Shown: positions 1 through 61,304 of the stretch, in pieces
How the letters are laid out: each line of letters starts with the position of its first letter
How positions within the stretch are numbered: the first letter of the stretch is position 1
Assembly: GCF_030684315.1 (NCBI RefSeq)
Contig: NC_081388.1
Coordinates: 23,233,015 to 23,297,014, forward strand
Direction: 5' to 3'
DNA: 64,000 nucleotides
Origin: Stegostoma tigrinum
Lineage: Eukaryota
Notes under the pieces: model-generated
Database searches by the model: none
What the model was told of the DNA's origin: nothing
What the model saw: the letters and a program-made list of their open reading frames with translations, nothing else
Program-made: the position numbers and the translations under genes

Positions 1-53
1 TGATGAACGGTCTAGGCCCGAAATGTCAGCTTTTGTGCTCCTAAAATGCTGCT
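1..53 (+). mobile_element. Penelope terminal fragment with partial hammerhead motif, cut by the window edge
   Basis: tgatgaacggtctaggcccgaaatgtcagcttttgtgctcc matches the family A terminus. Confidence 0.75.
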
Positions 54-1559: not shown

Positions 1560-1950
1560 TGAATGATTAGAAAGAAAGGTTAGAGATGACTTGATTGAAA
1601 CATGCAAGATCCTGAGAGGACTTAACAGTGTATGTGGAAAGGATGTTGCCTGTGTGGGAGAAGCTTGAATGGGGAGGTCATTGTTTAAAAATAAGGGTCA
1701 ATCATTTAAGGTAGAGAGCAGGAAAATTTCTTTTTTTCTGTCTTAGAGGGTTATGAATCTTTGGAATTCTCTTCCTCAGAAAGAAGAAGAGGCAAAATCT
1801 TTGGAGGTTTTAAAGCAAAGACTCTTGATTAGCAAAAGGGTGAAAAGTTATCAGGAATGTACAGACATGTGGAGTTGAGGTTACAATCAAATCAGCCATG
1901 AATTTCTTCAATGGTGCAGCAGGCTCAGGTGGTCTATTCCTATTATTAAT
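1560..1950 (+). mobile_element. CR1 LINE short 3' fragment
   Basis: gatgacttgattgaaacatgcaagatcctg (DLIETxKIL) and a CR1-type 3' UTR. Confidence 0.65.
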
Positions 1951-1951
1951 C

Positions 1952-2168
1952 ATAAACAGAAGTTGTTGGGAAAGCTCAGCATCAGTGAAGCAAAAAAATC
2001 AGAGTTAATGTTTTGGGTCCGATGACCCTTCCTCAGAATTTCTGTGATAACAAGATGTAGAGCTGGATGTACACAGCAGGCAAAGTTCTCCAGCATCTGC
2101 AGTTTCTATTATCTCAGAATTTCTGTTTTTGTTTCTGATTTATGGCATCCGCAGTTCTTTTGGTTTTT
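1952..2168. mobile_element. Family B hammerhead-bearing terminal fragment with a nested family A piece (~2046-2112)
   Basis: Minus strand reads CTGAGGA-A-GGGTC-atcg-GACCC-aAAACATT. Repeat ctcagaatttctgt at 2032-2045 / 2113-2126. Confidence 0.7.
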
Positions 2169-2830
2169 ACTCTATTCATAACTTGTATGTAATTGACAGG
2201 TCTTGTTACAACAACTGATCAGAACTACAAAGTATTTATAGACAGCTTTTAGTTTTAATTCCAAAATATGCTTTTTAAGAAGAAGTGCGACAAAAACAAA
2301 AGCTAATGTAATTCAGTGAGTGACAAAATCTTCTTTGATGTCCATTACATATCGTCCCTATAAAGTGTTAGGGAAACTTCAAACAGGGAGGGACTTAGGA
2401 AGAAAAGATAACAAATGTGCTGAATATCGCCCTGTCTCAGGCAAATGTCAATCTTCCAGCTTTATGTGTTTAACCTTCCAGGAATATATGATTAAAAAGG
2501 GTTAAAAACTGACTACAACACTTGGCTGTATGCGGTATTGGCTGGGCGACCTAATGTATGGACTAGAGTGCTGTGAGGACCATACCCTTGAGAACAGCAT
2601 TATAAACATCCCTGAACTGGAGGTAAAACAAAAGGAAAAACGCTCTTTTACTCTGAATGCTGGAATTCAGTGGATGTCAAATGGAATCAGAACAACAGAA
2701 CTTTCAACAACCTGCAGGACCAAGAATCACAAAATCGACTGCTGAACTGCCAACATCAACACTACTGGTGAAATCCAATGATGACAACAACATCCCCCTA
2801 TCTGCTATTCACAAATGATTCATAGACTGA

Positions 2831-3057
2831 GAGATAATGGGAACTGTAGATGCTGGAGAATCCAAGATAACAAAGTGTGAAGCTGGATGAACACAGCAGG
2901 CCAAGCAGCATCTCAGGAGCACAAAAGCTGATGTTTCGGGCCTAGACCCTTCATCAGAGACTCTGACGAAGGGCCTAGGCCCGAAACGTCAGCCTTTGTG
3001 CTCCTGAGATGCTGCTTGGCCTGCTGTGTTCATCCAGCTACACACTTTGTTATCTTG
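2831..3057. mobile_element. Fold-back Penelope-terminus mini-insertion with two head-to-head hammerheads (family A)
   Basis: Near-perfect ~200-bp palindrome centred at ~2960. TSD gattcatagactga at 2817-2830 / 3058-3071. Confidence 0.92.
2963..2990 (+). ncRNA. Minimal type I hammerhead ribozyme motif
   Basis: CTGACGA-A-GGGCC-TA-GGCCC-GAAAC-GTC, core intact. An inverted copy lies at 2930-2957 on the minus strand. Confidence 0.75.
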
Positions 3058-4058
3058 GATTCATAGACTGATCTGTGTTATTTCTTAACTTTAATCTTTT
3101 TGGACTTAGTGCTTGTTTCTACTGTATGAATGTTTGTTGGACTACTATTTCTATTCACATTTAACAATTAATAAACTTGCTCAATTTGTTAATTCAGGAC
3201 AGCCTTGTTAAGTTAACTGGAGAAGTAGAATAGGGAAGGACCTGGCATCCTGGATGTGGTGTGAGATGGTGGGAACAGTCAGTCAGTCAAAACAAGGAGC
3301 CTAAAGAGCAGAGTCCATTCTGCCCAAATGTCTATTTCAGCTGTTGGTTGGCAGAGTCCTTATAGGGCTTTGAGTTCACCCAGAGGAAATAGTCAGCTAA
3401 GCCTGCAAGTTCAGCTGTGTCCCAAAGTATGGCAAGCCCAAAATTGACATGAATTGATATTCAATAAATAGTGAACTCAAAAATACCTTGCAGTCTTTTC
3501 CACAATAAAGAAATATCCCTAATTTCTGAGTGACTATCAAACTGTAAGCCAACAGGAGGCATGCCAGTTGTAGCTGTCTGACTGAGTTCATCTCAACAAA
3601 TAATGATGATGCACACAAGTAAAGTGAAATGTTTACAAATGAAATTTTAATTTGAAAAACGCTGTGTCAACTTTGTGGTTTCAATAAATCTTATGTTAAT
3701 TGCAGCAACATTGTGATTGTGTTGAGCAACCCATTTGTCCTGGAAGCTCTTCAATAGGAAACCCATTACCTGCTGAATTATAAGTCGATGGCAGATTAAA
3801 TCTGTGAGAATCTTTCCTGATTACGTATTAAATTTAATTGAAATTGCATGGGAAACGTCAAAAAGCAAGAGGTTGCAAGTGGCACCCCTTAATTGTACAT
3901 TACTACATTTTTCATTGTATAGGTCTCACCTGCCCAAGAACTGGTCCTAACGTCTCACAAATTGGAAGCTCTCCCTCCTTCACCATTCTTCAGCCATGTA
4001 TTCATTCACTGCATCCTCTTACTTCTAACACATTGCATTGGGCATAATCCTGAGGTTA

Positions 4059-5986
4059 ACAAAGTGTGGAGCGGGATGAACACAGCAGGCCAAGCAGCAT
4101 CTCAGGAGCACAAAAGCTGATGTTTCAGGCCTAGACCCTTCATCAGAGAGGGGGATGGGGAGAGGGAACTGGAATAAATAGGGAGAGGGGGACTGAAGAT
4201 GGAGAGAAAAGAAGATAGGTGGAGAGGAGAGTATAGGTGGGGAGGTAGGGAGGAGGGGATAGGTCAGTCCGGGGAAGACGGATAGGTCAAAGAGGCAGGA
4301 TGAGGTAGTAGGTAGGAAATGGAGGTGCGGCTTGAGGTGGGAGGAAGGGATTGGTGAGAGGAAGAACAGGTTAGGGAAGCGGAGACAGGCTGGGCTGGTT
4401 TTGGGATGCAGTGGGGGGAGGGGAAGAACTGGGCTGGTTTTGGGATGGGTTGGGGGAAGGGGAGATTTTGAAGCTTGTGAAGACCACATTGATACCATTG
4501 GGCTGCAGGGTTCCCAAGCAGAATATGAGTTGCTGTTCTTGCAACCTTCGGGTGGCATCATTGTGGCACTGCAGGAGGCCCATGATGGACATGTCGTCTG
4601 AGGAATGGGAGGGGGAGTTAAAATGGTTCGCGACTGGGAGGTGCAGTTGTTTAATGCGAACCGAGCGGAGGTGTTCTGCAGGAGACGCGGTCAAGGGTGT
4701 TCTTGATCACTGTGGGGGGAAAGTTGCGGTGCTTGAAGAACGTGGACATCTGGGATTTGCGGGAGTGGAATGCCACATCCTGGGAGCAGATGCGGCGGAG
4801 GCAGAGGAATTGGGAATAGGGGATGGAATTTTTGCAGGAGGGTGGGTGAGAGGAGGTGTATTCTAGGTAGTCTCCCGCATTTCCCGCAACACATCCCTCA
4901 CACCCTGCCCCCGCCATAACCGCCTCAAGAGGATTCCCCTCGACCTCACATACCACCCCACCAACCTCCGGATACAATGCATCATCCTCTGACACTTCCG
5001 CCACCTATAATCCGACCCTACCACCCAAGCCATTTTTCCATCCCCATTCTTGTCTGCCTTCCGAAGAGACCACTCTCTCCACGACTTCCTTGTCAGCTCC
5101 ACACTCCCCTCCAACCCCACCACACCCGACACCTTCCCCTGCAACTGCAGGAAGTACTACACTTGCCCCCACACCACCTCCCTCACCCCCATCCCAGGCC
5201 CCAAGATGACCTTCCATATTAAGCAGATGTTCACCTGCACATCTGCCAATGTGGTATACTGCATCCATTGTACCCGGTGTGGCTTCCTCTACATTGGGGA
5301 AACCAAGCGGAGGCTTGTGGACCGCTTTGCAGAACACCTCCGCTCAGTTCACAATAAACAACTGCACCTCCCAGTCGCGAACCATTTCAACTCCCCCTCC
5401 CATTCTTTAGATGACATGTCCTTCATGGGCCTCCTGCAGTGCCACAATGATGCCACCCGAAGGTAGCAGGAACAGCAACTCATATTCCGCTTGGGAACCC
5501 TGCAGCCCAATGGCATCAATGTGGACTTCACAAGCTTCAAAATCTCCCCTTCCCCTAACCCATCCCAAAACCAGTCCAGTTCTTCCCTTCCACCCACTGC
5601 ATCCCAAAACCAGCCCAGCCTGTCTCTGCCTCCCTAACCTGTTCTTCCTCTCACCCATCCCTTCCTCCTCCCTCAAGCCGCACCTCCATTTCCTACCTAA
5701 TACCTCATCCCGCCTCCTTGACCTATCCGTCTTCCCTGGACTGACCTATCCCCTCCCTACCTCCCCACCTATACTCTCCTCTCTACCTATCTTCTTTTGT
5801 CTCCATCTTCAGTCCCCCTCTCTCCCTATTTATTCCAGAACCCTCTCCCCATCCCCCTCTCTGATGAAGGGTCTAGGCCTGAAACGTCAGCTTTTGTGCT
5901 CCTGAGATGCTGCTTGGCCTGCTGTGTTCATCCAGCCTCACATTTTATTATCTTGGATTCTCCAGCATCTGCAGCTCCCATTATCT
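4059..5986. mobile_element. Rearranged Penelope-like insertion with inverted arms (minus arm ~4059-4870, plus arm ~4871-5986)
   Basis: GIY-YIG C-terminal coding and terminal repeat in both orientations. TSD ataatcctgaggtta at 4044-4058 / 5987-6001. Confidence 0.92.
5861..5888 (+). ncRNA. Minimal type I hammerhead ribozyme motif
   Basis: CTGATGA-A-GGGTC-TA-GGCCT-GAAAC-GTC. The inverted partner is at 4119-4146 on the minus strand. Confidence 0.75.
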
Positions 5987-6418
5987 ATAATCCTGAGGTT
6001 ACTGGCTTTGAAGTCTTGGTTTTTAAATTCATTCCTAATTCTACTTTCAAAATAATTTCTCCCTTCTTATCTATGTTGTTGGTGGTGATATACAGCCATG
6101 TCTTCTGGCTGTTCATCCGTTCCCAATAAGAATATCCTGCAGCTGCTCAGTGACATTCTTGACCCTGGATTTAGGGACACAGTAAATCATGCTGGAGTGG
6201 TATCTTTGGCTGTGGAATCGCTGAAACATCTTGCCATTCATTACCCAGCAGCTGCTGGAAGGAATTGGTAACAGCACAACCAAAAATCTCCAGCGTAGCA
6301 GTAGTGCGATAGACCAGAATAACTCTCCTCCATATCCAGTCAAATGATTTTCTGCTTTAATAAGATGTTTAATGAAATGCTCTGATAACATGAATCTCGT
6401 ACTCACTGTAATATACAA

Positions 6419-6580: not shown

Positions 6581-7126
6581 TCACCGCAGTCTCTATTAGG
6601 TATCTGCGTAGCCCCAGAAATTCATTCCTAAATTACACCATTTTACATCTCTTTTTCTCTCTACAATTGTTAACATCCGTTTTGTCATTTGCACAGTACC
6701 TCTACCCCATCTATTGTCTTAACCCCCCCTCCTCTGCCTCTGTCAAAAGTATAAATAAACAGCATGTTTTAACCCTTTTCAGTTCTGAAGAAGTTATACA
6801 GACTTAACATGTTAATTCTGTTTCTCACTTCACAGATTTTGCCAGATTGGCATTCCCTGTGTTGGTTTGTTTCAAGACTGCATTTTATTTTGCTTTATTC
6901 AGATTTACAGCATTTGTGGTAATTTGGTTTAAATTACGCACCAATTAACATTTATTTTTATCACAAAAAGGAAACAGAAAGAATGCCTTGGATGGTGGAG
7001 TACCATAAGTTTGTGGTTCCTGTTGTCACCTATTTTTGCAGAAGTGGTGTACTTCATTTACTGTTAGATTGTAGTCCAAGCAATCTTACAATAGGTTTAT
7101 CTGTAAACTGATTCCTTATTCATGTG

Positions 7127-7301
7127 ATAGTTGGAACTGCAGATGCTGGAGAATCTGAGATAACAAGGTGTAGAGCTGGATGAACACAGCAGGCCAAGCA
7201 GCACCAGAGGAGCAGGAAGGTCTAGGCCCGGGGCATTGGCCTTCCTGCTCCTCTGGTGCTGCCTGGCCTGCTGTGTGCATCCAGCTCTACGCCTTGTTAT
7301 C
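7127..7301. mobile_element. Fold-back Penelope-terminus mini-insertion, variant subfamily, hammerhead core lost
   Basis: Inverted arms gataacaaggtgtagagctggatgaacac / gtgtgcatccagctctacgccttgttatc, with a flanking repeat ctt(a/g)ttcatgtg. Confidence 0.8.
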
Positions 7302-8359
7302 ACTTGTTCATGTGGTTTTGTATTGTTAGGTCTGTTGTCAGTCACACTCTCTAAACTAAAGACTGCATTCATACATTTCTCATTATTATGATTCATTTCT
7401 ACCATTAGTAAAAGTTCCCATTGCCCCGTGATAGGTTTTTAGATGGCTCCTGTAACTTTTTTTCATAAGTCATCTCTTCGCAAGTAATTGTTTGGTCAGA
7501 ATAGATTGTGATGATCCATTTAAAGTGCCAATGCGAAATGGATAAGCTAAATTAAACTTGTGTACCTCCCCATCACTTCACAAGAGTTCACTCATAGTGC
7601 TTCTGGGAATGCTTCAGGAATTTCCAATTGGCTGTTTTTAAATAAAAATTGTTCATGAAATGCTGGCATCACTGGCTCGGCCAGCACTTTTGCAGATCAT
7701 TACTTACCCTTGACAATGAGCTAGCCTCTTGAACTGCTGCTGTCTTTGGGATGTCGGTACACCCTCCTCTACTTTGAAGGTAATATTTTGTCTTAATTTG
7801 GCCGTTGAATGAGTTTATCATTGTTAACAGGTCAAATCAGGGATAATCCTGACAATTGAGTGCTCGAAAGAACATCCAGCCTTGCCAAAGCCTTGGTGAA
7901 AGGATAAGAGTTAAACTTTAGTCATATTAGCTATAGAACAATGTATATAAGCAGCCCCTCTCTTTCTTTCAATATCATAACATCGTTCAGTTTCTTCCTT
8001 TCAGGGGATTTTGTATTCCTTTTAATTACCCCATCTCCAAGCAGGAATTGTACCTGGCCTCACAATATCTTGTTGGTTGAAGGTGTTGAGCATTTGTAAA
8101 GGAGTATCCTGACCTTCTCCTCTTCCCTGTACTTTGGATAGATCCCCATTATCTGCTGATGCATGGAGGGGAACCTCTGATCTACACACTTTGTAAATTC
8201 TGCACTCAGGATTTTTTTTAGACAAATGCACATTGTGTTCTTCTAAACATAGACCACAGAAGAGGTTTAAGTGTAAATTGTTCTGATTCTTGACCAGATT
8301 TATTTCTTGAGGAGCTTACACAGAGAAATTAGAACTAGAATTGGAGTTTATTGTCATGC

Positions 8360-14131: not shown

Positions 14132-14344
14132 AGATAACAAAGTGTGGAGCTGGATGAACACAGCAGGCCAAACAGCATCTTACAAGCACAAAAGCTGACG
14201 TTTCGGGCCTAGACCCTCTGATGAAGAGTCTAGGCCTGAAATGTCAGCTTTTGTGCTCCTAAGATGCTGCTTGGCCTGCTGTGTTCATCCAGCTCCACAC
14301 TTTGTTATCTTGGATTCTCCAGCATCTGCAGTTCCCATTATCTC
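14132..14344. mobile_element. Fold-back Penelope-terminus mini-insertion (family A)
   Basis: Palindrome. TSD agagcaat(a/g)attatg at 14117-14131 / 14345-14359. Confidence 0.9.
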
Positions 14345-18684: not shown

Positions 18685-18743
18685 GGTATAATGTGGGAAA
18701 ATATGAAGTTGTTCATTTTGGAAGGCAATACAATATAGCAGAG

Positions 18744-18887
18744 ATAATAAAATGTGAGGCTGGAAGAACATAGCAGGCCCAGCAGCATCTCAGGAGCTCA
18801 GGAGATGCTGCTGGGCCTGCTGTGTTCATCCAGCCTCACATTTTATTATCTTGGATTCTCCAGCATCTGCAGTCCCCATTATCACTG
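18744..18887. mobile_element. Fold-back Penelope-terminus mini-insertion without hammerhead core
   Basis: Palindrome centred ~18797. TSD atacaatatagcagag at 18728-18743 / 18888-18903. Confidence 0.88.
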
Positions 18888-25862: not shown

Positions 25863-26319
25863 TATTGTTTGCAAGCTCGCTTGTTGAACTCTGAGATAAA
25901 GAGATCTCGGTGGCTTGATATATGAATTTCAAAAAGTTAGCATGTTGGTATGGTAAATGATTAAGGAGGCAAATGGAATGCAGTTTTTCATAGTGAGAGG
26001 AATGAATTGTAAAAGTAGGAAAGTTTTGCTACAATTGTACAGTGTATTGGTGAGACCACATCTGGAGGCTTGTATACAATCCTGGCCCTGTTCAAAGCAG
26101 AAAAGGTTCAGCGAACTGGTTCTTGAAATAAAATTCCTTTTTTATTAGGAAAGGGTGGAAAAATGAGGTCTGCATGCGCTAGAGTCTAGACAAATGAGAT
26201 GTGGTCTAATTGAAACATACAAGATTCTATAGGGATTTGACTTTGGGTAGATGTAGAACTGATGTTTTCTTTTATGAAAGAGACTAAACATAGAGGAAAC
26301 AGTTTAAAAATAAGGGATA

Positions 26320-26528
26320 ACAAAGTGTGAAGCTGGATGAACACTGCAGGCCAAACAGCATCTCAGGAGCACAAAAGCTGACGTTTCGGGCCTTATCAGC
26401 TCTGATGAAGGGTCTAGGCCCGAAATGTCAGCTTTTGTGCTCCTGAGATGCTGCTTGGCCTGCTGTGTTCATCCAGCTTCACACTTTGTTATCTTAGTTT
26501 CTCCAGCATCTGCAGTCCCCATTATCTC
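26320..26528. mobile_element. Fold-back Penelope-terminus mini-insertion (family A)
   Basis: Palindrome. TSD taaaaataa(g/t)ggata at 26305-26319 / 26529-26543. Confidence 0.88.
26402..26429 (+). ncRNA. Minimal hammerhead motif (CpG-decayed stem III)
   Basis: agct-CTGATGA-A-GGGTC-TA-GGCCC-GAAAT-GTC-agct, with a 4-bp stem I possible. A similar copy is at 14218-14245. Confidence 0.6.
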
Positions 26529-30156: not shown

Positions 30157-31101
30157 GAGATAACAAAGTGTGGGGCTGGATGAACACAGCAGGCCAAGCA
30201 GCATCTTAGGAGCACAAAAGCTGACGTTTCAGGCCTAGACCCTTCATCAGAAATGGGGGATGGGGAGAGGGTTCTGAAATAAATAGGGAGAGAGGGGGAG
30301 GTGGATCGAAGATGGATAGAGGAGCAGATAGGTGGAGAGGAGATAGACAAGTTAAAGAGGTGGGGATGGAGCCAGTAGAGGTGAGTGTAGGTGGGGAGGT
30401 AGGGAAGGGATAGGTCAATCTGGGGAAGACGGACAGGTCAAGGGGGTGGGATGAGGTTAGTAAGTAGGAAATGGGGGTGCAGCTTGAGGTGGGAGGAGAG
30501 GATACGTAAGAGGAAGAACAGGATAGGAAGGCGGGGACGAGCTGGACTGGTTTTGGGATGCAGTGGGGGAAGGGGAGATTTTGAAACTGGTGAAGTCCAC
30601 ATTGATACCATTGGGCTGCAGGGTTCCCAAGCGGAATATGAGTTGCTGTTCCTGCAACCTTCGGGTGGCCTCATTGTGGCACTGCAGGAGGCCCATGATG
30701 GACATGTCGTCTGAGGAATGGGAGGGGGAGTGGAAATGGTTTGCGACTGGGAGGTGCAGTTGTTTATTGTGAACCGAGCGTAGGTGTTCTGCAAAGCGGT
30801 CCCCAAGCCTCCGCTTGGTTTCCCCAATGTAGAGGAGGTCACAACGAGTACAGCGGATGCAGTATACCACATTGGCAGATGTGCAGGTGAACATCTGCTT
30901 CATGTAGAAAGTCTTCTTGAGGCCTGGGATGGGGGTGAGGGAGGTGGTGTGGGGGCAGGTGTAGCACTTCCTGCGGTTGCAGGGGCAAGTTCTGGGTGTG
31001 GTGGGGCTGGTGGGGAGTGTGGAGCAGACAAGGGAGTCACGGAGAGAGTGGTCCCACCGGAAAGCATACAAGGGTGGGGATGGAAAAATGTCTTTGGTGG
31101 T
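30157..31101 (-). mobile_element. Penelope-like 3' fragment (GIY-YIG + terminal repeat) in the last intron
   Basis: ORF 30457-31143 carries CNRRKCYTC and VVYCIRC..YIGETKRRLGDRFAEH, with the same terminal sequence as the 53830 copy. Confidence 0.92.
30223..30250 (-). ncRNA. Minimal type I hammerhead motif, sense to the ICAM-like pre-mRNA
   Basis: Minus strand reads CTGATGA-A-GGGTC-TA-GGCCT-GAAAC-GTC. Confidence 0.72.
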
Positions 31102-31364
31102 TGAGAGAAAGCTTGGGACTAGACCAAATGCTTTCGAGGACATGAAAGGAAGTGAGAATGGAAATTACAGAGGCAATTTCAAGAATTGTTCAATCTTGCC
31201 TGGAGTTGAAGTCAGAGCTGGAGGAATTTAGAATTGGAAATCTTCTCCAAAAACGTTGTAAAGATTGAACCAGCAATAGCAGACCAATCAGTTAAACTTC
31301 AAAAATCAGAACACTCCGAAAAACAATTACTCACACGAGAGTCTGAACGGATGTTTTTAGGGGT

Positions 31365-31458
31365 ATCAACATGTGGAGCTGGATGAACACAGTGGGCCAA
31401 GCAGCATCAGAGGAGCAGGAAAGCTGACGTTTCAGGCCTAGACCCTCCTTCAGAAAAT
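31365..31458 (-). mobile_element. Short Penelope terminal fragment (variant subfamily) with mutated hammerhead
   Basis: Minus strand reads ctgaagga-gggtctaggcct-gaaacgtc-agctttcctgctcctctgatgctgc. Confidence 0.75.
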
Positions 31459-34535: not shown

Positions 34536-35182
34536 CTGTTAAAGGAGAATCACAGTTAATAGGATTCACAGAAATAGTGTGTTTAAAGTTTCAGGCCTCC
34601 ACTTGGTGCAGGTCAGGAATGGAAGTGGACTAACCAGTGTACATCTTCCCAACATTTTGTCAACTCCAGCATGTAGCCTGAACTATGTATGCACCCAGTA
34701 GGAATCCCCAACCCACCTCTGCAGCTACCAATTAGACTCATTCATTCCCTTGTTAAGGGGAATAAGGGAGGCTGTTTGAGATTTTCCATTCAGTCTCCAG
34801 TTTCCCAATACAACAGAGACTGATGAACTGCCTGGAAGCAGACCAGGTTACCAGTACTCAAGGCAGCTTGTGGGCCTTCATGCCTGCGTAAGTGCAAGTC
34901 CCGTTGAAGACTGCCATATGGAAAGGTTCTCCCTGCAATGGTGTTGGATGAGCTGCTTTCTCTTGTTTTTTCCTCCTTTTTTTGAAAATTGCTGAAGCTG
35001 TAGAAGTGAGGAAGTGGCTATGTAGTGGTACTATCACTGACCTGACAATGCTCTGGGGACATGAATTAAATCCCACCACGGCAGCTGGTGCAACTAAATT
35101 CAATTGAAATCTTGTCTAATGACGGTGATTATGAAGTAACTGATATTGATTGTCAGAAAAACCTGTCTGATTTACTAATCTG

Positions 35183-35444
35183 AGATAACAAAGTGTGGAG
35201 CTGATGAACACAGCAGGCCAAGCAGCATCTCAGGAGCACAAAAGCTGACGTTTCAGGCCTAGACCCTTCATCAGAGAGCTCTCTGAGTTTCGGGCCTAGA
35301 CCCTTCATCAGAGAGCTCTCTGATGAAGGGTCTAGGCCCGAAACTCAGCTTTTGTGGTCCTGAGATGCTGCTTGGCCTGCTGTGTTCATCCAGCTCCACA
35401 CTTTGTTATCTTGGATTCTCCAGCATCTGCAGTTCCCATTATCA
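35183..35444. mobile_element. Double fold-back Penelope-terminus mini-insertion with three hammerhead motifs
   Basis: Contains a perfect 66-bp palindrome at 35283-35348. TSD ctgatttact(a/c)atctg at 35167-35182 / 35445-35460. Confidence 0.9.
35247..35274 (-). ncRNA. Minimal type I hammerhead motif, sense to the ICAM-like pre-mRNA
   Basis: Intact core, with a second tandem minus-strand motif at ~35285-35311 lacking one G. Confidence 0.7.
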
Positions 35445-35477
35445 CTGATTTACTCATCTGGTTAGGAAAAGAAATCT

Positions 35478-36048
35478 CTCCCTCCACCTCCCATTCCTTA
35501 GACAACATGTCCATCATGGGCCTCCTGCAGTGCCACAATGATGCCACCCGAAGGTTGCAGGAACAGCAACTCACATTCCGCTTGGGAACGCTGCAGCCCA
35601 ATGGTATCAATGTGGACTTCAGAAGCTTCAAAATCTCCACCTCCCCCACTACATCCCAAAACCAGCCCAGCTCATCCCCGCCTCCCTAACCTGTTCTTCT
35701 TCTCACCTATCCCATCCTCCCACCTCAGGCCGCACCTCCATTCCCCACCTACCAACCTCATCCCGCCTCCTTGACCCGTCCGTCCTCCCCAGACTGACCT
35801 ATCCCCTCCCTACCTCCCCACCTATACTCTCCTCTCCACCTATTTTCTTCACTCTCCATTTTCGGTCCGCCTCCCCCTCTCTCCCTATTTATTCCAGAAC
35901 CCTCTCCCCATCCCCCTCTCTGATGAAGGATCTAGGCCCGAAACGTCAGCTTTTGTGCTCCTGAGATGCTGCTTGGCCTGCTGTGTTCATCCAGCTTCAC
36001 ATTTTATTATCTTGGATTCTCCACCATCTGTAGTTCCCATTATCTCTG
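35478..36048 (+). mobile_element. Penelope-like 3' fragment
   Basis: MSIMGLLQCHNDATRRLQEQQL..QPNGIN plus terminal repeat. TSD agg(a/t)aaagaaatct at 35464-35477 / 36049-36062. Confidence 0.9.
35920..35947 (+). ncRNA. Minimal type I hammerhead motif
   Basis: CTGATGA-A-GGATC-TA-GGCCC-GAAAC-GTC (one stem II mismatch). Confidence 0.65.
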
Positions 36049-53829: not shown

Positions 53830-56055
53830 AAGATAACAAAGTGTGGATCTGGATGAACACAGCAGGCCAAGCAGCATCTCAGGAGCACAAAAGCTGACGT
53901 TTCAGGCCTAGACCCTTCATCAGAGAGGGGGATGGGGAGAGGGTTCTGGAATAAATAGGGAGAGAGGGGGAGGCGGACCGAAGATGGAGAGAAAACAAGA
54001 TAGGTAGAGAGGAGAGTATAGGTGAAGAGGTGGGGAGGGGATGGGTCAGTCCAGGGAAGACGGACAGGTCAAGGAGGTGGGATGAGGTGGTAGGTAGGAA
54101 ATGGAGGTGCGGCTTCAGGTGGGAGGAAGGAATGGGTGAGAGGACGAACAGGTTAGGGAAGCAGAGACAGGCTGGGCTGGTTTTGGGATGCATGGGGGAA
54201 GGGGAAGAACTGGGCTGGTTTTGGGATGCAGTGGGGGAAGGGGAGATTTTGAAGCTTGTGAAGTCCACATTGATACCATTGGACTGCAGGGTTCCCAAGC
54301 GGAATATGAGTTGCTGTTCCTGCAACCTTCGGGTGGCATCATTGTGGCACTGCAGGAGGCCCATGATGGACATGTCGTCTGAGGAATGGGAGGGGGGAGT
54401 TGAAATGGTTCGTGACTGGGAGGTGCAGTTGTTTGTTGCGAACCGAGCGGAGGTGTTCTGCAAAGCGGTCCCCAAGCCTCCGCTTGGATTCCCCAATGTA
54501 GAGGAAGCCACACTGGGTACAATGGATACAATATACCACATTGGCAGATGTGCAGGTGAACATCTGCTTGATATGGAAGGTCATCTTGGGACCTGGGATA
54601 GGGGTGAGGGAGGAGGTGTGGGGGCAAGTGTAGCACTTCCTGCGTTTGCAGGGGAAGGTGCCAGGTGTGGTGGGGTTGGAGGGCAGTGTGGAGCGAACAA
54701 GGGAGTCACGGAGAGAGTGGTCTCTCCGGAAAGCAGACAAGGGTGGGGATGGAAAAATAGCTTAGGTGGTGGGGTCGGATTGTAGATGGCGGAAGTGTCG
54801 GAGGATGATGCCTTGTATCCGGAGGTTGGTGGGGTGGTATGTAAGGTCGAGGGGGATCCTCTTGGGGCGGTTGTGGCGGGGGCGGGGTGTGAGGGATGTG
54901 TTGTGGGAAATGCGGGAGATGTGGTCAAGGGTGTTCTCGACCACTGTGGGGGGAAAGTTGCGGTCCTTGAAGAACGTGGATATCTGGGATGTGCAGGAGT
55001 GGAATGCCTCATCCTGGGAGCAGATGCGGCGGAGGTGGAGGAATTGGAGATAGGGGATGGAATCTTTGCAGGAGGGTGGGTGGGAGGAGGTGTATTCTAG
55101 GTAGCTGTGGGAGTTAGTGGGCTTGAAATGGACATCAGTTTCTTGCTGGTTACCTGAGATGGAGACTGAGAGGTCCAGGAAGGTGAGGGATGTGTTGGAG
55201 ATGGCCCAGGTGAACTTGAGGTTGGGGTAGAAGGTGTTGGTGAAGTGGATGAACTGTTTGAGCTCCTCTGGGGAGCAAGATGTGGTGCCGATACAGTCAT
55301 CAACGTAACGGAGGAAGAGGTGGGATTTGGGGCCTGTGTAGGTGCGGAAGAGGGACTGTTCCACGTAACCTACAAAGAGGCAGGCATAGCTGGGGCCCAT
55401 GCGGGTACCCATGGCCACCCCCTTTGTCTGTAGGAAGAGGGAGGAATCGAAAGAGAAGTTGTTGAGGGTGAGGACGAGTTCGGCTAGGCGGATGAGGGTG
55501 TTGGTGGAGGGGGATTGGTCGGGCCTGTGGGACAGCAAGAAGTGGAGGGCCTTGAGGCCATCTGCATGAGGAATACAGGTGTATAGGGACTGGACGTCCA
55601 TAGTGAAAATGAGGTGTTGGGGGCCAGGGAGTTGGAAGTCCTGGAGGAGGTGGAGGGCGTGGGTGGTGTCACGGATGTAGGTAGGGAGTTCCTGGACCAA
55701 AGGGGAGAACATGGAGTCCAGTTAGGTGGAGATGAGTTCGGTGGGGCAGGAACAGGCTGAGACAATGGGTCGACCAGGGCAGGCAGGTTTGTGGATTTTG
55801 GGAAGGAGATAGAAACAGGCCGTGCGGGGTTGGGGAACAATGAGGTTGGAGGCTGTGGGTGGGAGGTCCCCTGAGGTGATGAGGTCATGGATGGTGTTGG
55901 AGATGATGGTTTGGTGCTCGGGGGTGGGGTTATGATCAAGGGGGCAGTAGGAGGAGGTGTTGGAGAGTTGGCGTTTGGCCTCAGCGATGTAGAGGTCAAT
56001 GAGCCATACTACCACTGTGCCTCCCTTGTCTGCAGGTTTGATGGTGAAAATATCA
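53830..56055 (-). mobile_element. Penelope-like retroelement (Neptune-like), 5'-truncated, RT + GIY-YIG, recently inactivated
   Basis: IKPADKGG, FTMDVQSLYT, GVAMGTRMGPSYA, RYVDD, Cys linker CKRRKCYTC, VVY..YIGE..R..EH. Two in-frame stops (55722, 54762) and a frameshift near 54390. TSD ctcaaaagtagtaat at 53815-53829 / 56056-56070. Confidence 0.95.
53896..53923 (-). ncRNA. Minimal type I hammerhead motif in the terminal repeat of the long Penelope-like copy
   Basis: CTGATGA-A-GGGTC-TA-GGCCT-GAAAC-GTC, downstream of and co-oriented with the RT/GIY-YIG ORF. Confidence 0.78.
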
Positions 56056-61103: not shown

Positions 61104-61304
61104 CAGAGAAAGTAGGAACTGCAGATGCTGGAGAATCCGAGACAACAAAGTGTGGGGCTGGATGAACACAGCAGGCCAAGCAGCATCGGAGGAGCACAAA
61201 TGTTGACGTTTTGGGCCTAGACCCTTCTAGGCCTGAAACATTAGCTTTTGCTCCTCTGATGCAGTTTGGCATGCTGTGTTCATCCAGCCCCACACTTTGT
61301 TGTC
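61104..61304. mobile_element. Fold-back Penelope-terminus mini-insertion, turn point inside hammerhead stem II
   Basis: Inverted arms. TSD ttgtacttctgttt at 61090-61103 / 61305-61318. Confidence 0.85.

What the first reader, a model, noticed from the sequence alone, without database searches (positions are those of the whole stretch)
2817..3071. Palindromic mini-insertions carrying head-to-head hammerhead ribozymes on both strands
Seen: this ~230-bp insertion is a near-perfect inverted repeat of the Penelope terminal sequence. It has CTGACGA-A-GGGCC-TA-GGCCC-GAAACGTC on + (2963-2990), its mirror on - (2930-2957), and a 14-bp TSD. The same design recurs at 14132, 26320, 35183, 61104, 7127 and 18744, so at least 7 occur in 64 kb. 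Established: Penelope-like elements carry minimal hammerheads in their pseudo-LTRs and often have inverted termini. Inference: this is an abundant class of protein-free, ribozyme-bearing hairpin elements mobilised by the Penelope RT/GIY-YIG. A transcript from either strand would fold into a long rod containing a self-cleavage motif, like a retrozyme or MITE. I cannot tell whether this class has been described for this lineage.
Basis: partly seen in the sequence, partly recalled or inferred. Interest (0 to 1): 0.85.

Follow-up and report, generated by a model that had tools for sequence, protein, structure and literature searches.

The report
Palindromic stubs of Penelope retrotransposon insertions
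These ~200-bp palindromes are real insertions, but they are best read as by-products of how Penelope-like retrotransposons integrate (copying the end of their RNA from both nicked DNA strands), which is a published architecture and not a new class of self-cleaving hairpin elements.

Summary
The observation largely holds. Window 2831-3057 is a head-to-head inverted repeat of a Penelope-like element (PLE) 3' end with a 14-bp TSD, and a related species has the empty site. The window also holds six more palindromes, one non-palindromic twin and one 1.9-kb version. All nine share one design. One arm reaches the element's full 3' terminus (31-nt 'tail'), and the other stops at a second terminus 31 nt further in. 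Centres differ in every copy, and arms pair by insertion, not by arm type. This is the published PLE insertion architecture. It also fits in-vitro evidence that a PLE protein extends both nicked strands from two adjacent start sites. The hammerhead-like motif meets the PLE 'min-HHR' criteria but matches no Rfam model. Only 2 of 7 palindromes keep both boxes on both arms, and none has two intact cores. No arm starts at the predicted cut. The transcript would be a -182 kcal/mol rod that buries the motif. These are probably dead-on-arrival by-products, not ribozyme hairpin transposons. One new detail: arm 5' ends pile up just before CUGAUGA, about 31 nt after a TATA-like box. Unchecked first-stage notes report the same units elsewhere in this genome.

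The parts
2817..2830 (.). Left copy of the target-site duplication GATTCATAGACTGA
   Evidence: The related organism has a single copy at the empty site (X5 record 18 joins 2816|3058).
2831..2960 (-). Long ('tailed') arm of P2817: PLE 3'-terminal 130 nt (ref 400-529), including the 31-nt tail at 2831-2861
2930..2957 (-). min-HHR-like motif of the long arm, core mutated (GAAACATC)
2961..3057 (+). Short ('tail-less') arm of P2817: ref 401-497. It joins the target through GATTC microhomology (to 3062).
2963..2990 (+). min-HHR-like motif with intact boxes: CUGACGA, extra A, helix II GGGCC/GGCCC, GAAACGUC
3058..3071 (.). Right copy of the TSD
2046..2114 (+). Non-palindromic twin insertion. An inverted tail-less arm (ref 495->447, 2046-2085) is joined directly to a tail-only arm (ref 500-528, 2086-2114). 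TSD CAGAATTTCTGT at 2034-2045 and 2115-2126.
4055..5986 (+). Large version of the same design. Tail-less inverted arm 4055-4870 (-), tailed direct arm 4871-5986 (+), reaching into the RT region. TSD ATAATCCTGAG at 4044-4054 and 5987-5997.
7125..7302 (-). P7127: tailed arm 7125-7214 (-), tail-less arm 7219-7302 (+). Junction ref 437/412, no complete HHR. TSD CATGAA[C/T]AAG.
14132..14344 (+). P14132: tail-less arm 14132-14217 (-), tailed arm 14216-14344 (+). Junction ref 410/401. 15-bp TSD.
18744..18887 (+). P18744: arms 18742-18800 (-) and 18796-18883 (+). Junction about ref 437/440, no HHR. 16-bp TSD.
26319..26528 (+). P26320: tail-less arm to 26393 (-), tailed arm 26400-26528 (+). 14-bp TSD.
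35183..35444 (+). P35183: tail-less arm 35183-35278 (-), 37-nt flip-back duplication at the centre, tailed arm 35316-35444 (+). 16-bp TSD at 35167-35182 and 35445-35460.
61104..61304 (-). P61104: tailed arm 61107-61227 (-), tail-less arm 61226-61304 (+). Junction ref 410/414, no CUGAUGA box. 13-14-bp TSD.
31364..31456 (-). Single-arm mini-insertion (ref ~400-494) with TSD CCCCTAAAAA[G/C]AT. It has the same 5' boundary as the palindrome centres.
53830..55712 (-). Parent-type PLE copy: RT ORF 54762-55712, C/T-rich 3' UTR, TATTTAT box, min-HHR at 53896-53923, tail-less 3' end at 53830
30158..31143 (-). Parent-type PLE copy: GIY-YIG ORF 30457-31143, 3' UTR, min-HHR at 30223-30250, tail-less 3' end at 30158

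Best explanation
Each palindrome is one integration event of a Penelope-like element. In that event the two 3'-OH ends of a staggered GIY-YIG cut (10-16 bp apart, giving the TSD) each primed reverse transcription of the element's RNA. One cDNA started at the outer start site (...CCCATTATCT, the 'tailed' arm). The other started at a second site 31 nt upstream that ends in the same TTATCT motif (the 'tail-less' arm). Both cDNAs ran only as far as about 95-130 nt, often to a discrete RNA 5' end 2-4 nt before CUGAUGA. They were then joined head-to-head by a template switch or microhomology at a variable point. Shown here: the anatomy, the TSDs, the empty site, the two termini, the variable centres, and arms pairing by insertion. 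Inferred: priming from both strands (shown in vitro for an Anolis PLE, PMC11167929); that the 5' pile-up is a transcription start driven by the TATTTAT box about 31 nt upstream; and that the products are dead on arrival. The minimal hammerhead sits at the centre only because it lies at the 5' edge of the copied RNA segment. It plays no demonstrable part in forming the palindrome, and a palindromic transcript would lock it in a perfect duplex.
For: (1) The parent is a PLE: RVT_1 and GIY-YIG ORFs lie directly upstream of the arm sequence. (2) All 9 two-armed insertions pair one tailed arm (ref ~528) with one tail-less arm (ref 494-497). Ordinary single copies end at the same two termini (30158, 53830 and 31364 tail-less; 36045 tailed). 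Genome-wide, the best-supported loose ends fall at exactly these places with heterogeneous A/T-rich flanks (table 7: 2830, 2865/2866, 3055). (3) Arm lengths form a continuum inside one design, from a 29-nt tail-only arm (2086-2114) to 0.8-1.1 kb arms (4055-5986). (4) Centre junctions differ in all seven minis, and more than 2,000 alternative joints exist genome-wide (table 5). (5) Arms pair by insertion: 18 differences summed, against a mean of 41.7 for re-pairings, with 2 of 5,040 permutations as low, and no fixed short-type versus long-type difference. (6) In P2046, P7127 and the large insertion, the tail-less arm contains sequence absent from the tailed arm, and the tailed arm has the tail that the other lacks. 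As they now stand, neither arm can be a fold-back copy of the other. (7) Literature. PLE inserts bounded by head-to-head inverted pLTRs, with a 31-bp tail on one of them and a TSD (PMC3846280). [quoted passage not shown] A PLE protein nicks and extends both strands, with two adjacent internal RT start sites whose interval is the tail; HHR mutants do not affect insertion (PMC11167929). (8) None of 17 mini-arm 5' ends lies at the predicted HHR cut (ref 430/431), while 7 lie at ref 399-401.
Against: A constant outer end of the short arm, together with a 5' pile-up, is also what a discrete transcribed unit would show. Some alternative centre joints have contig depths tens of times the unique depth, which could mean that particular palindromes were copied. 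With a family this abundant, recurrent independent junctions are also expected. D. virilis Penelope has an internal promoter downstream of its start site (PMC2377424), so copies beginning at the start site are not necessarily dead. Asymmetric deletions after insertion at palindrome centres could mimic variable junctions. No RNA data were available, so the start-site inference is untested. The arms of the large insertion differ at 5 of their last 25 nt, which a one-RNA model does not predict.
Confidence: 0.72

Rival explanations
1. Self-propagating non-autonomous element. The ~100-130-nt segment from the 5' boundary to the RT start sites, or the whole hairpin, is a SINE-like unit with its own internal promoter. 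PLE protein copies it in trans over and over, and the palindrome is either inherited or regenerated at each cycle.
For: Discrete 5' boundary at ref 399-401 in 7 of 17 mini arms and in a single-arm insertion. 767 contig loose ends at the equivalent place genome-wide. Very high abundance in two species. An internal promoter is known for D. virilis Penelope. Non-autonomous PLE derivatives exist (retrozymes, 10.64898/2026.07.22.740005; MRC1 in PMC8557442).
Against: No two of seven palindromes share a centre. No difference is fixed between arm types, and arms carry variants that match different long-copy subfamilies. The minis lack the TATTTAT box and the upstream UTR. Core positions are no better conserved than flanks: 6.8% against 6.4% mismatch.
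Confidence: 0.15
2. Self-priming (snap-back) of a single cDNA or of an antisense template, as proposed for PLE inverted repeats in 2013. One arm is a fold-back copy of the other, not a second RNA-templated cDNA.
For: Palindromes at inverted junctions were interpreted this way in PMC3846280. The centre of P35183 shows back-and-forth copying. Arms of one insertion are near-identical.
Against: The short arm always stops at a site that is independently a 3' terminus of single copies. In three insertions each arm holds sequence the other lacks. The 9 of 9 heterotypic termini fit two start sites on a template better than a random stop of fold-back synthesis. Extension of both strands has been observed in vitro (PMC11167929).
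Confidence: 0.1
3. Functional ribozyme hairpins. Transcripts from either strand self-cleave through the head-to-head hammerheads, and cleavage is part of the element's life cycle.
For: The motif meets the published min-HHR criteria. In P2817 the mirrored arm happens to offer a 7-of-8-bp helix I, read directly from the sequence.
Against: No Rfam hammerhead hit even at E<=10. Five of 7 palindromes lack a complete motif on one or both arms, and none has two intact cores. Each transcript carries one sense motif plus its perfect antisense, so no cis dimer is possible. MFE is -181.8 kcal/mol for the rod, with the motif fully paired. In the native context helix I is 2 bp and the fold is no better than shuffles, z=0.39. 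No arm begins at the cut site.
Confidence: 0.02
4. Assembly artefact: fold-back chimeras of reads.
For: Palindromes are a known artefact class, and no single contig spans the interior.
Against: TSDs at all nine. Empty site in a related organism. Exact contigs across both outer junctions in two samples. The asymmetric tail.
Confidence: 0.01

Closest known systems
Complex PLE insertions: inverted 5'-truncated copy or inverted pLTR plus a one-sided 30-40-bp 'tail' (Arkhipova et al. 2013, PMC3846280; Craig et al. 2021, PMC8557442)
   Same: Head-to-head orientation. One TSD around the whole insert. A 31-nt tail on only one arm. Palindromic or microhomology junctions. Hammerhead motif in the terminal repeat. 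Parent with RT and GIY-YIG.
   Different: Here the commonest form is the minimal one, with two arms of 60-130 nt and no ORF or direct pLTR between them. It occurs at high density (8 minis and 1 large in 64 kb), with many arm 5' ends at one position.
Anolis carolinensis Poseidon (PAc) in vitro (Frangieh et al. 2024, PMC11167929)
   Same: Two RT start sites a tail-length apart, about 90-125 nt downstream of the hammerhead. The AUG of CUGAUGA lies at the hammerhead as in PAc. A/T-rich targets. Hammerhead cleavage is not reflected in insertion ends.
   Different: In vitro, no difference in start site between strands was reported. Here every two-armed genomic insertion uses one site of each kind (9 of 9). 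In this family the reading frame from that AUG closes after 13 codons.
L1 twin priming (5'-inverted L1 insertions)
   Same: Both ends of a staggered break prime cDNA synthesis, giving an inverted and a direct segment inside one TSD.
   Different: In L1 the two segments are adjacent, non-overlapping parts of one RNA, with the second primer annealing by microhomology. Here both arms copy the same RNA segment, each from its own defined start site, which gives a true palindrome.
Animal non-LTR retrozymes (tandem hammerhead repeats; Cervera & de la Pena 2020; Li et al. 2026 preprint 10.64898/2026.07.22.740005)
   Same: Short, protein-free, derived from PLE pLTR sequence, and carrying a type-I or minimal hammerhead.
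   Different: Retrozymes are direct tandem repeats whose adjacent ribozymes can dimerise and release circular RNA. Here there are no direct tandems, and each strand has one sense motif facing its antisense.
PLE minimal hammerheads (min-HHR; Cervera & de la Pena 2014, PMC4209133)
   Same: CUGANGA and GAAA boxes. [quoted passage not shown] G10.1-C11.1. Palindromic 15.2-16.2 (ACGU) with no helix III loop.
   Different: Helix I in the native context is only about 2 bp, as in the D. virilis variant, not 4-5 bp. Activity is untested.

Membership tests
PLE complex insertion (inverted copy + one-sided tail + TSD) | Derived from an element encoding a reverse transcriptase and a GIY-YIG endonuclease | tested here: met
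   Pfam RVT_1 (54762-55712, E 1.9e-6, just under the curated cut-off) and GIY-YIG (30457-31143, above the cut-off). The arm sequence follows these ORFs and a shared 3' UTR.
PLE complex insertion (inverted copy + one-sided tail + TSD) | Head-to-head inverted 5'-truncated copy inside one TSD-flanked insert | tested here: met
   Empty site in a relative.
PLE complex insertion (inverted copy + one-sided tail + TSD) | 30-40-bp tail present at only one end | tested here: met
   31-nt tail on exactly one arm in 9 of 9 two-armed insertions.
PLE complex insertion (inverted copy + one-sided tail + TSD) | Short TSD of variable length at A/T-rich targets | tested here: met
   TSDs of 10-16 bp, 60-79% A+T against about 58% for the window.
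PLE min-HHR (Cervera & de la Pena 2014) | CUGANGA and GAAA boxes with an NUH cleavage triplet | tested here: met
   11 matches with at most 1 mismatch, against 0.01 expected. 6 of 12 full-length motifs are intact.
PLE min-HHR (Cervera & de la Pena 2014) | [quoted passage not shown] | tested here: met
   An extra A follows CUGAUGA in all copies. GGG../..CCC closes helix II in copies that keep the CpG (GGCCCG), and it is U in CpG-decayed copies.
PLE min-HHR (Cervera & de la Pena 2014) | Palindromic 15.2-16.2 with no helix III loop (dimer-competent) | tested here: met
   GAAACGUC gives the self-complementary ACGU.
PLE min-HHR (Cervera & de la Pena 2014) | Helix I of 4-5 bp | tested here: not met
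   In long copies only AG/CU (2 bp) can pair. The MFE of the native context does not form the hammerhead, z=0.39. A 2-bp helix I is known for the D. virilis variant.
PLE min-HHR (Cervera & de la Pena 2014) | Self-cleavage (as dimer or protein-assisted) | not testable with these tools
   No RNA runs available. Needs a bench assay.
Rfam hammerhead families (Hammerhead_1, _3, _II, HH9, HH10) | Covariance-model score at or above gathering | tested here: not met
   No hit in the whole window at gathering, and none at E<=10 in 2700-3200. This is expected for a motif without helix III.
Non-LTR retrozyme | Direct tandem repeats of hammerhead-bearing units | tested here: not met
   The only tandem repeat in 64 kb is a 37-nt duplication at the centre of P35183. 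All adjacent arms are head-to-head.
MITE / fold-back DNA transposon | Symmetric terminal inverted repeats with a TSD of fixed, transposase-specific length | tested here: not met
   TSD length varies from 10 to 16 bp. The termini are asymmetric (one-sided tail). The arms are the 3' end of a retroelement.
L1-type twin priming | Inverted and direct segments are adjacent, non-overlapping parts of the template RNA | tested here: not met
   Both arms cover the same segment (ref ~400-495) in 7 of 9. Only P2046 is non-overlapping.

The most novel reading that the evidence does not exclude
The 100-130-nt segment between the discrete 5' boundary (ref ~400) and the two RT start sites is a self-sustaining, SINE-like parasite of the PLE, with an internal promoter. 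Its obligate double priming seeds the genome with on the order of 10^5 or more perfect hairpin loci. When these are read through, they yield dsRNA (a Dicer/ADAR substrate) homologous to the PLE's own recognition region. That would amount to a built-in brake on the family.
Probability: 0.12. Interest if true: 0.6.

Novelty: new member of a known kind. Interest (0 to 1): 0.3.

Why it matters
This does not appear to be a new kind of mobile element. Its value is as in-vivo genomic support for the PLE integration model. Nine of nine two-armed insertions combine the two alternative start sites. Arms share their source. In three cases each arm holds sequence the other lacks. Insertion 5' ends ignore the hammerhead cut site. 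All of this fits coordinated priming from both strands, probably on one RNA or one dimeric RNP, and it argues that ribozyme cleavage does not shape the inserted copy. For annotation, thousands of such palindromes should be labelled as PLE fragments and not as MITEs, miRNA-like hairpins or novel ribozyme elements. The weak Rfam miRNA hits only reflect hairpin shape.

Tried and rejected
Rfam at gathering on the whole window and at E<=10 on 2700-3200 gave no hammerhead family. It gave only sub-threshold miRNA and sisRNA models that match any long hairpin. Hammerhead cleavage as the origin of arm 5' ends was rejected, because none of 17 ends is at ref 430/431. A 3' splice site as the origin of the ref ~400 boundary was rejected, because there is no AG there; the nearest CAG is about 28 nt upstream. 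Retrozyme and MITE membership were both tested and not met. I looked for RNA evidence of a start site or of hairpin transcripts, but no RNA run holds the sequence, so this stays open. Core-versus-flank conservation across the window's copies shows no difference, but dead copies decaying neutrally would give that result anyway, so it says little about the master element. A test for ADAR-like strand-biased transitions found only one outlier arm, P7127 short arm. The organism's name is coded in the run tables. One unchecked first-stage note calls it a probable cartilaginous fish, and I did not verify that.
Full report
OBSERVATION. The sequence at 2817-3071 is as described. Two arms, 2858-2959 and 2961-3062, are 102 nt long and 95% complementary, with 1 nt between them. 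They are flanked by GATTCATAGACTGA at 2817-2830 and 3058-3071. CTGACGAAGGGCCTAGGCCCGAAACGTC lies at 2963-2990 (+), and a 3-mismatch mirror lies at 2930-2957 (-). With only the conserved boxes specified, the motif occurs 11 times in the window against 0.01 expected.

REALITY OF THE INSERTION. I laid contigs of four public runs on 1700-3700. In two samples of the window's own organism, exact contigs cross both outer junctions: 2141-2855 and 3033-3700, with 0 differences. In a related organism, about 5% diverged in the flanks, one 1,140-nt contig (X5 record 18) runs from 2816 straight to 3058. That is an empty site with a single copy of the 14-mer. The unit is therefore a lineage-specific insertion with a true TSD, not an assembly artefact, although no single contig spans its repetitive interior.

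PARENT ELEMENT. Single arms are the 3' ends of a longer repeat with a C/T-rich region upstream. ORFs directly upstream match GIY-YIG (30457-31143, -) and RVT_1 (54762-55712, -). The parent is a Penelope-like element (PLE). Against a longer reference (window 5459-5995), CUGAUGA is at ref 403-409 and GUC ends at ref 430.

ANATOMY OF THE PALINDROMES. Every one of the seven is asymmetric in the same way. One arm reaches ref ~528, and the other stops at ref 494-497 (...TTGTTATCT). Both termini end in TTATCT. TSDs are 10-16 bp. Three more insertions extend the series.
- 2046-2114 has a tail-less inverted arm (ref 495->447) joined directly to a 29-nt tail-only arm (ref 500-528), with a 12-bp TSD. It is not a palindrome at all.
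- 4055-5986 is a single TSD-flanked insert (ATAATCCTGAG) with the same design but arms of 0.8 and 1.1 kb that reach the RT region. Its junction is at 4870/4871.
- 31364-31456 is a TSD-flanked single arm covering ref ~400-494.
Ordinary single copies end at the same two termini: 30158 and 53830 are tail-less, and 36045 is tailed. Genome-wide, the best-supported contig loose ends with heterogeneous, A/T-rich continuations fall at those termini and at the arm's 5' boundary (table 7: 2830; 2865/2866 and 3055; 2958).

THE CENTRES. They differ in all seven.
- P2817: ref 400/401.
- P35183: ref 399/399, plus a 37-nt flip-back duplication.
- P14132: ref 410/401.
- P26320: ref 417/401.
- P7127: ref 412/437.
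- P18744: about ref 437/440.
- P61104: ref 414/410.
More than 2,000 alternative internal joints are seen in the contigs (table 5). In P2046, P7127 and the large insert, the tail-less arm holds sequence that the tailed arm lacks, while the tailed arm holds the tail. As they stand, neither arm can be a fold-back copy of the other. Asymmetric deletion after insertion cannot be excluded for individual cases.

ONE MASTER HAIRPIN OR MANY INDEPENDENT EVENTS? Over the 54 columns shared by all 14 mini arms, the two arms of an insertion differ at 1-4 sites (sum 18). Arms of different insertions differ at 5-8 on average. Only 2 of all 5,040 re-pairings reach a sum as low as 18, and no column separates short-type from long-type arms. 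The shared variants match different long-copy subfamilies in the window. For example, CAGCCTCACATTTTATTATC appears in both arms of P18744 and in the copy ending at 5986. The palindromes therefore arose repeatedly, each from its own source, and were not copied from one hairpin master.

MECHANISM. This is the architecture published for PLEs.
- Arkhipova et al. 2013 describe inserts completed by an adjacent inverted pLTR, a 31-bp tail on one of the inverted pLTRs, a TSD, and palindromes at head-to-head junctions.
- Craig et al. [quoted passage not shown]
- Frangieh et al. 2024 show in vitro that an Anolis PLE protein nicks and extends both strands. Reverse transcription starts at two adjacent internal sites whose interval is the tail. 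Hammerhead mutants do not change insertion, and no RNA-seq reads start at the ribozyme cut.
The geometry here matches. The start sites lie about 92 and 123 nt after the AUG of CUGAUGA. My reading is that both ends of the staggered cut prime cDNA synthesis, one at each start site, and the two short cDNAs are joined head-to-head. All nine two-armed inserts are heterotypic. If the sites were chosen independently, at the roughly 0.3/0.7 ratio suggested by loose-end counts, nine of nine would have a probability of about 4e-4. This points to coordinated use of one RNA or one dimeric RNP. That last step is inference.

THE 5' PILE-UP. Seven of 17 mini-arm 5' ends, plus the single-arm insertion, lie at ref 399-401, and none lies at ref 431. 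In the long copies a TATTTAT box has its first T 34 nt before CUGAUGA (35 in one copy), which is about 31 nt before ref 399-400. By my own knowledge of canonical TATA-to-start spacing, this suggests that the arms are full-length copies of short transcripts starting there. The minis lack that box. This is untested, because no RNA run holds the sequence. D. virilis Penelope uses an internal promoter, so transcription from within the minis cannot be ruled out.

THE RIBOZYME.
- The motif fulfils the PLE min-HHR criteria of Cervera & de la Pena 2014: both boxes, an extra nucleotide between 9 and 10.1, G10.1-C11.1 where the CpG survives, and a palindromic ACGU with no helix III. Helix I in the native context is only 2 bp.
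- The native context folds no better than shuffles, z=0.39.
- No Rfam hammerhead model matches.
- Of 12 arms with a full-length motif, 6 are intact. Among the seven palindromes only P2817 and P35183 have the first box on both arms, none has two intact cores, and three have no complete motif.
- Core positions are no better conserved than flanks, 6.8% against 6.4%. Decaying dead copies would give this result in any case.
- A transcript of 2831-3057 folds into a rod of -181.8 kcal/mol (z=-24) in which the motif is paired to its complement. Each strand carries one sense motif, so the dimer that min-HHRs need cannot form in cis.
The hammerhead is at the centre because it sits at the 5' edge of the copied segment, not because it acts there.

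COMPARISON AND VERDICT. The units behave like minimal versions of known PLE complex insertions and resemble L1 twin priming in principle. They are not retrozymes, since there are no direct tandems. They are not MITEs, since TSD length varies and the termini are asymmetric. The 2026 retrozyme preprint does not describe head-to-head forms. Other first-stage notes of this scan, all unchecked, report the same units in other windows of this genome. I rate the finding as a new member of a known kind and of modest interest. Its use is as genomic support for two-strand priming and as a caution for annotation.

Noticed in passing
window 7219-7245 (+), short arm of P7127: A dense cluster of transitions next to the junction. 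There are 8 transitions within 15 alignment columns, and 6 A>G plus 4 T>C over the arm (GAAACGTCAGC reads GGGGCATTGGC). No other arm has more than 4 in any 15 columns. Possible RNA editing of a double-stranded template, or error-prone synthesis at the switch point.
   Followed up: partly
window 4055-4080 vs 5925-5955: The two arms of the large inverted insertion differ at 5 of their last ~25 nt (GCTCCACACTTTGTTA vs GCCTCACATTTTATTA), in a pattern that looks like two subfamilies. The arms are 93-97% alike overall. This hints that the two arms may have come from two different RNAs, or from later conversion.
   Followed up: no
window 4677-4870: The inverted arm of the large insertion lacks about 448 nt that the direct arm and the copy at 53830-55712 both contain (4680 corresponds to 54462, and 4677 to 54911). 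This is an internal deletion or an RT template jump.
   Followed up: partly
window 35245-35323: The centre of P35183 holds a 37-nt, 2.1-copy duplication produced by antisense-sense-antisense-sense switching. It is the only tandem repeat scoring >=80 in the 64 kb.
   Followed up: yes
window 1968-2168: A second very-high-copy repeat, with contig depth 10^4-10^5 times the unique flanks in both organisms, hosts the P2046 insertion. I did not establish what it is.
   Followed up: no
window 5827-5833, 53951-53957 (-) and equivalents: A TATTTAT box is conserved in all five long copies, 34-35 nt before CUGAUGA. The sequence at the inferred start (CCCC/TCTCTG) resembles a polypyrimidine (TCT-type) initiator.
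   Followed up: partly
window 35461-36045: P35183 inserted about 20 nt upstream of the 5'-truncated end of another PLE copy in the same orientation. This fits the PLE tendency to land in or next to its own copies.
   Followed up: no
window 1-53: The window opens inside an arm copy (ref 404-456) that breaks off at ref 456 into unrelated sequence. Its 5' side is outside the window.
   Followed up: no
window 5864-5905 and equivalents: As in the Anolis PLE, an AUG lies inside CUGAUGA. In this family that frame closes after 13 codons, so the ORF start of the intact element must lie elsewhere, or all copies here are degenerate. No full-length copy is in the window.
   Followed up: no
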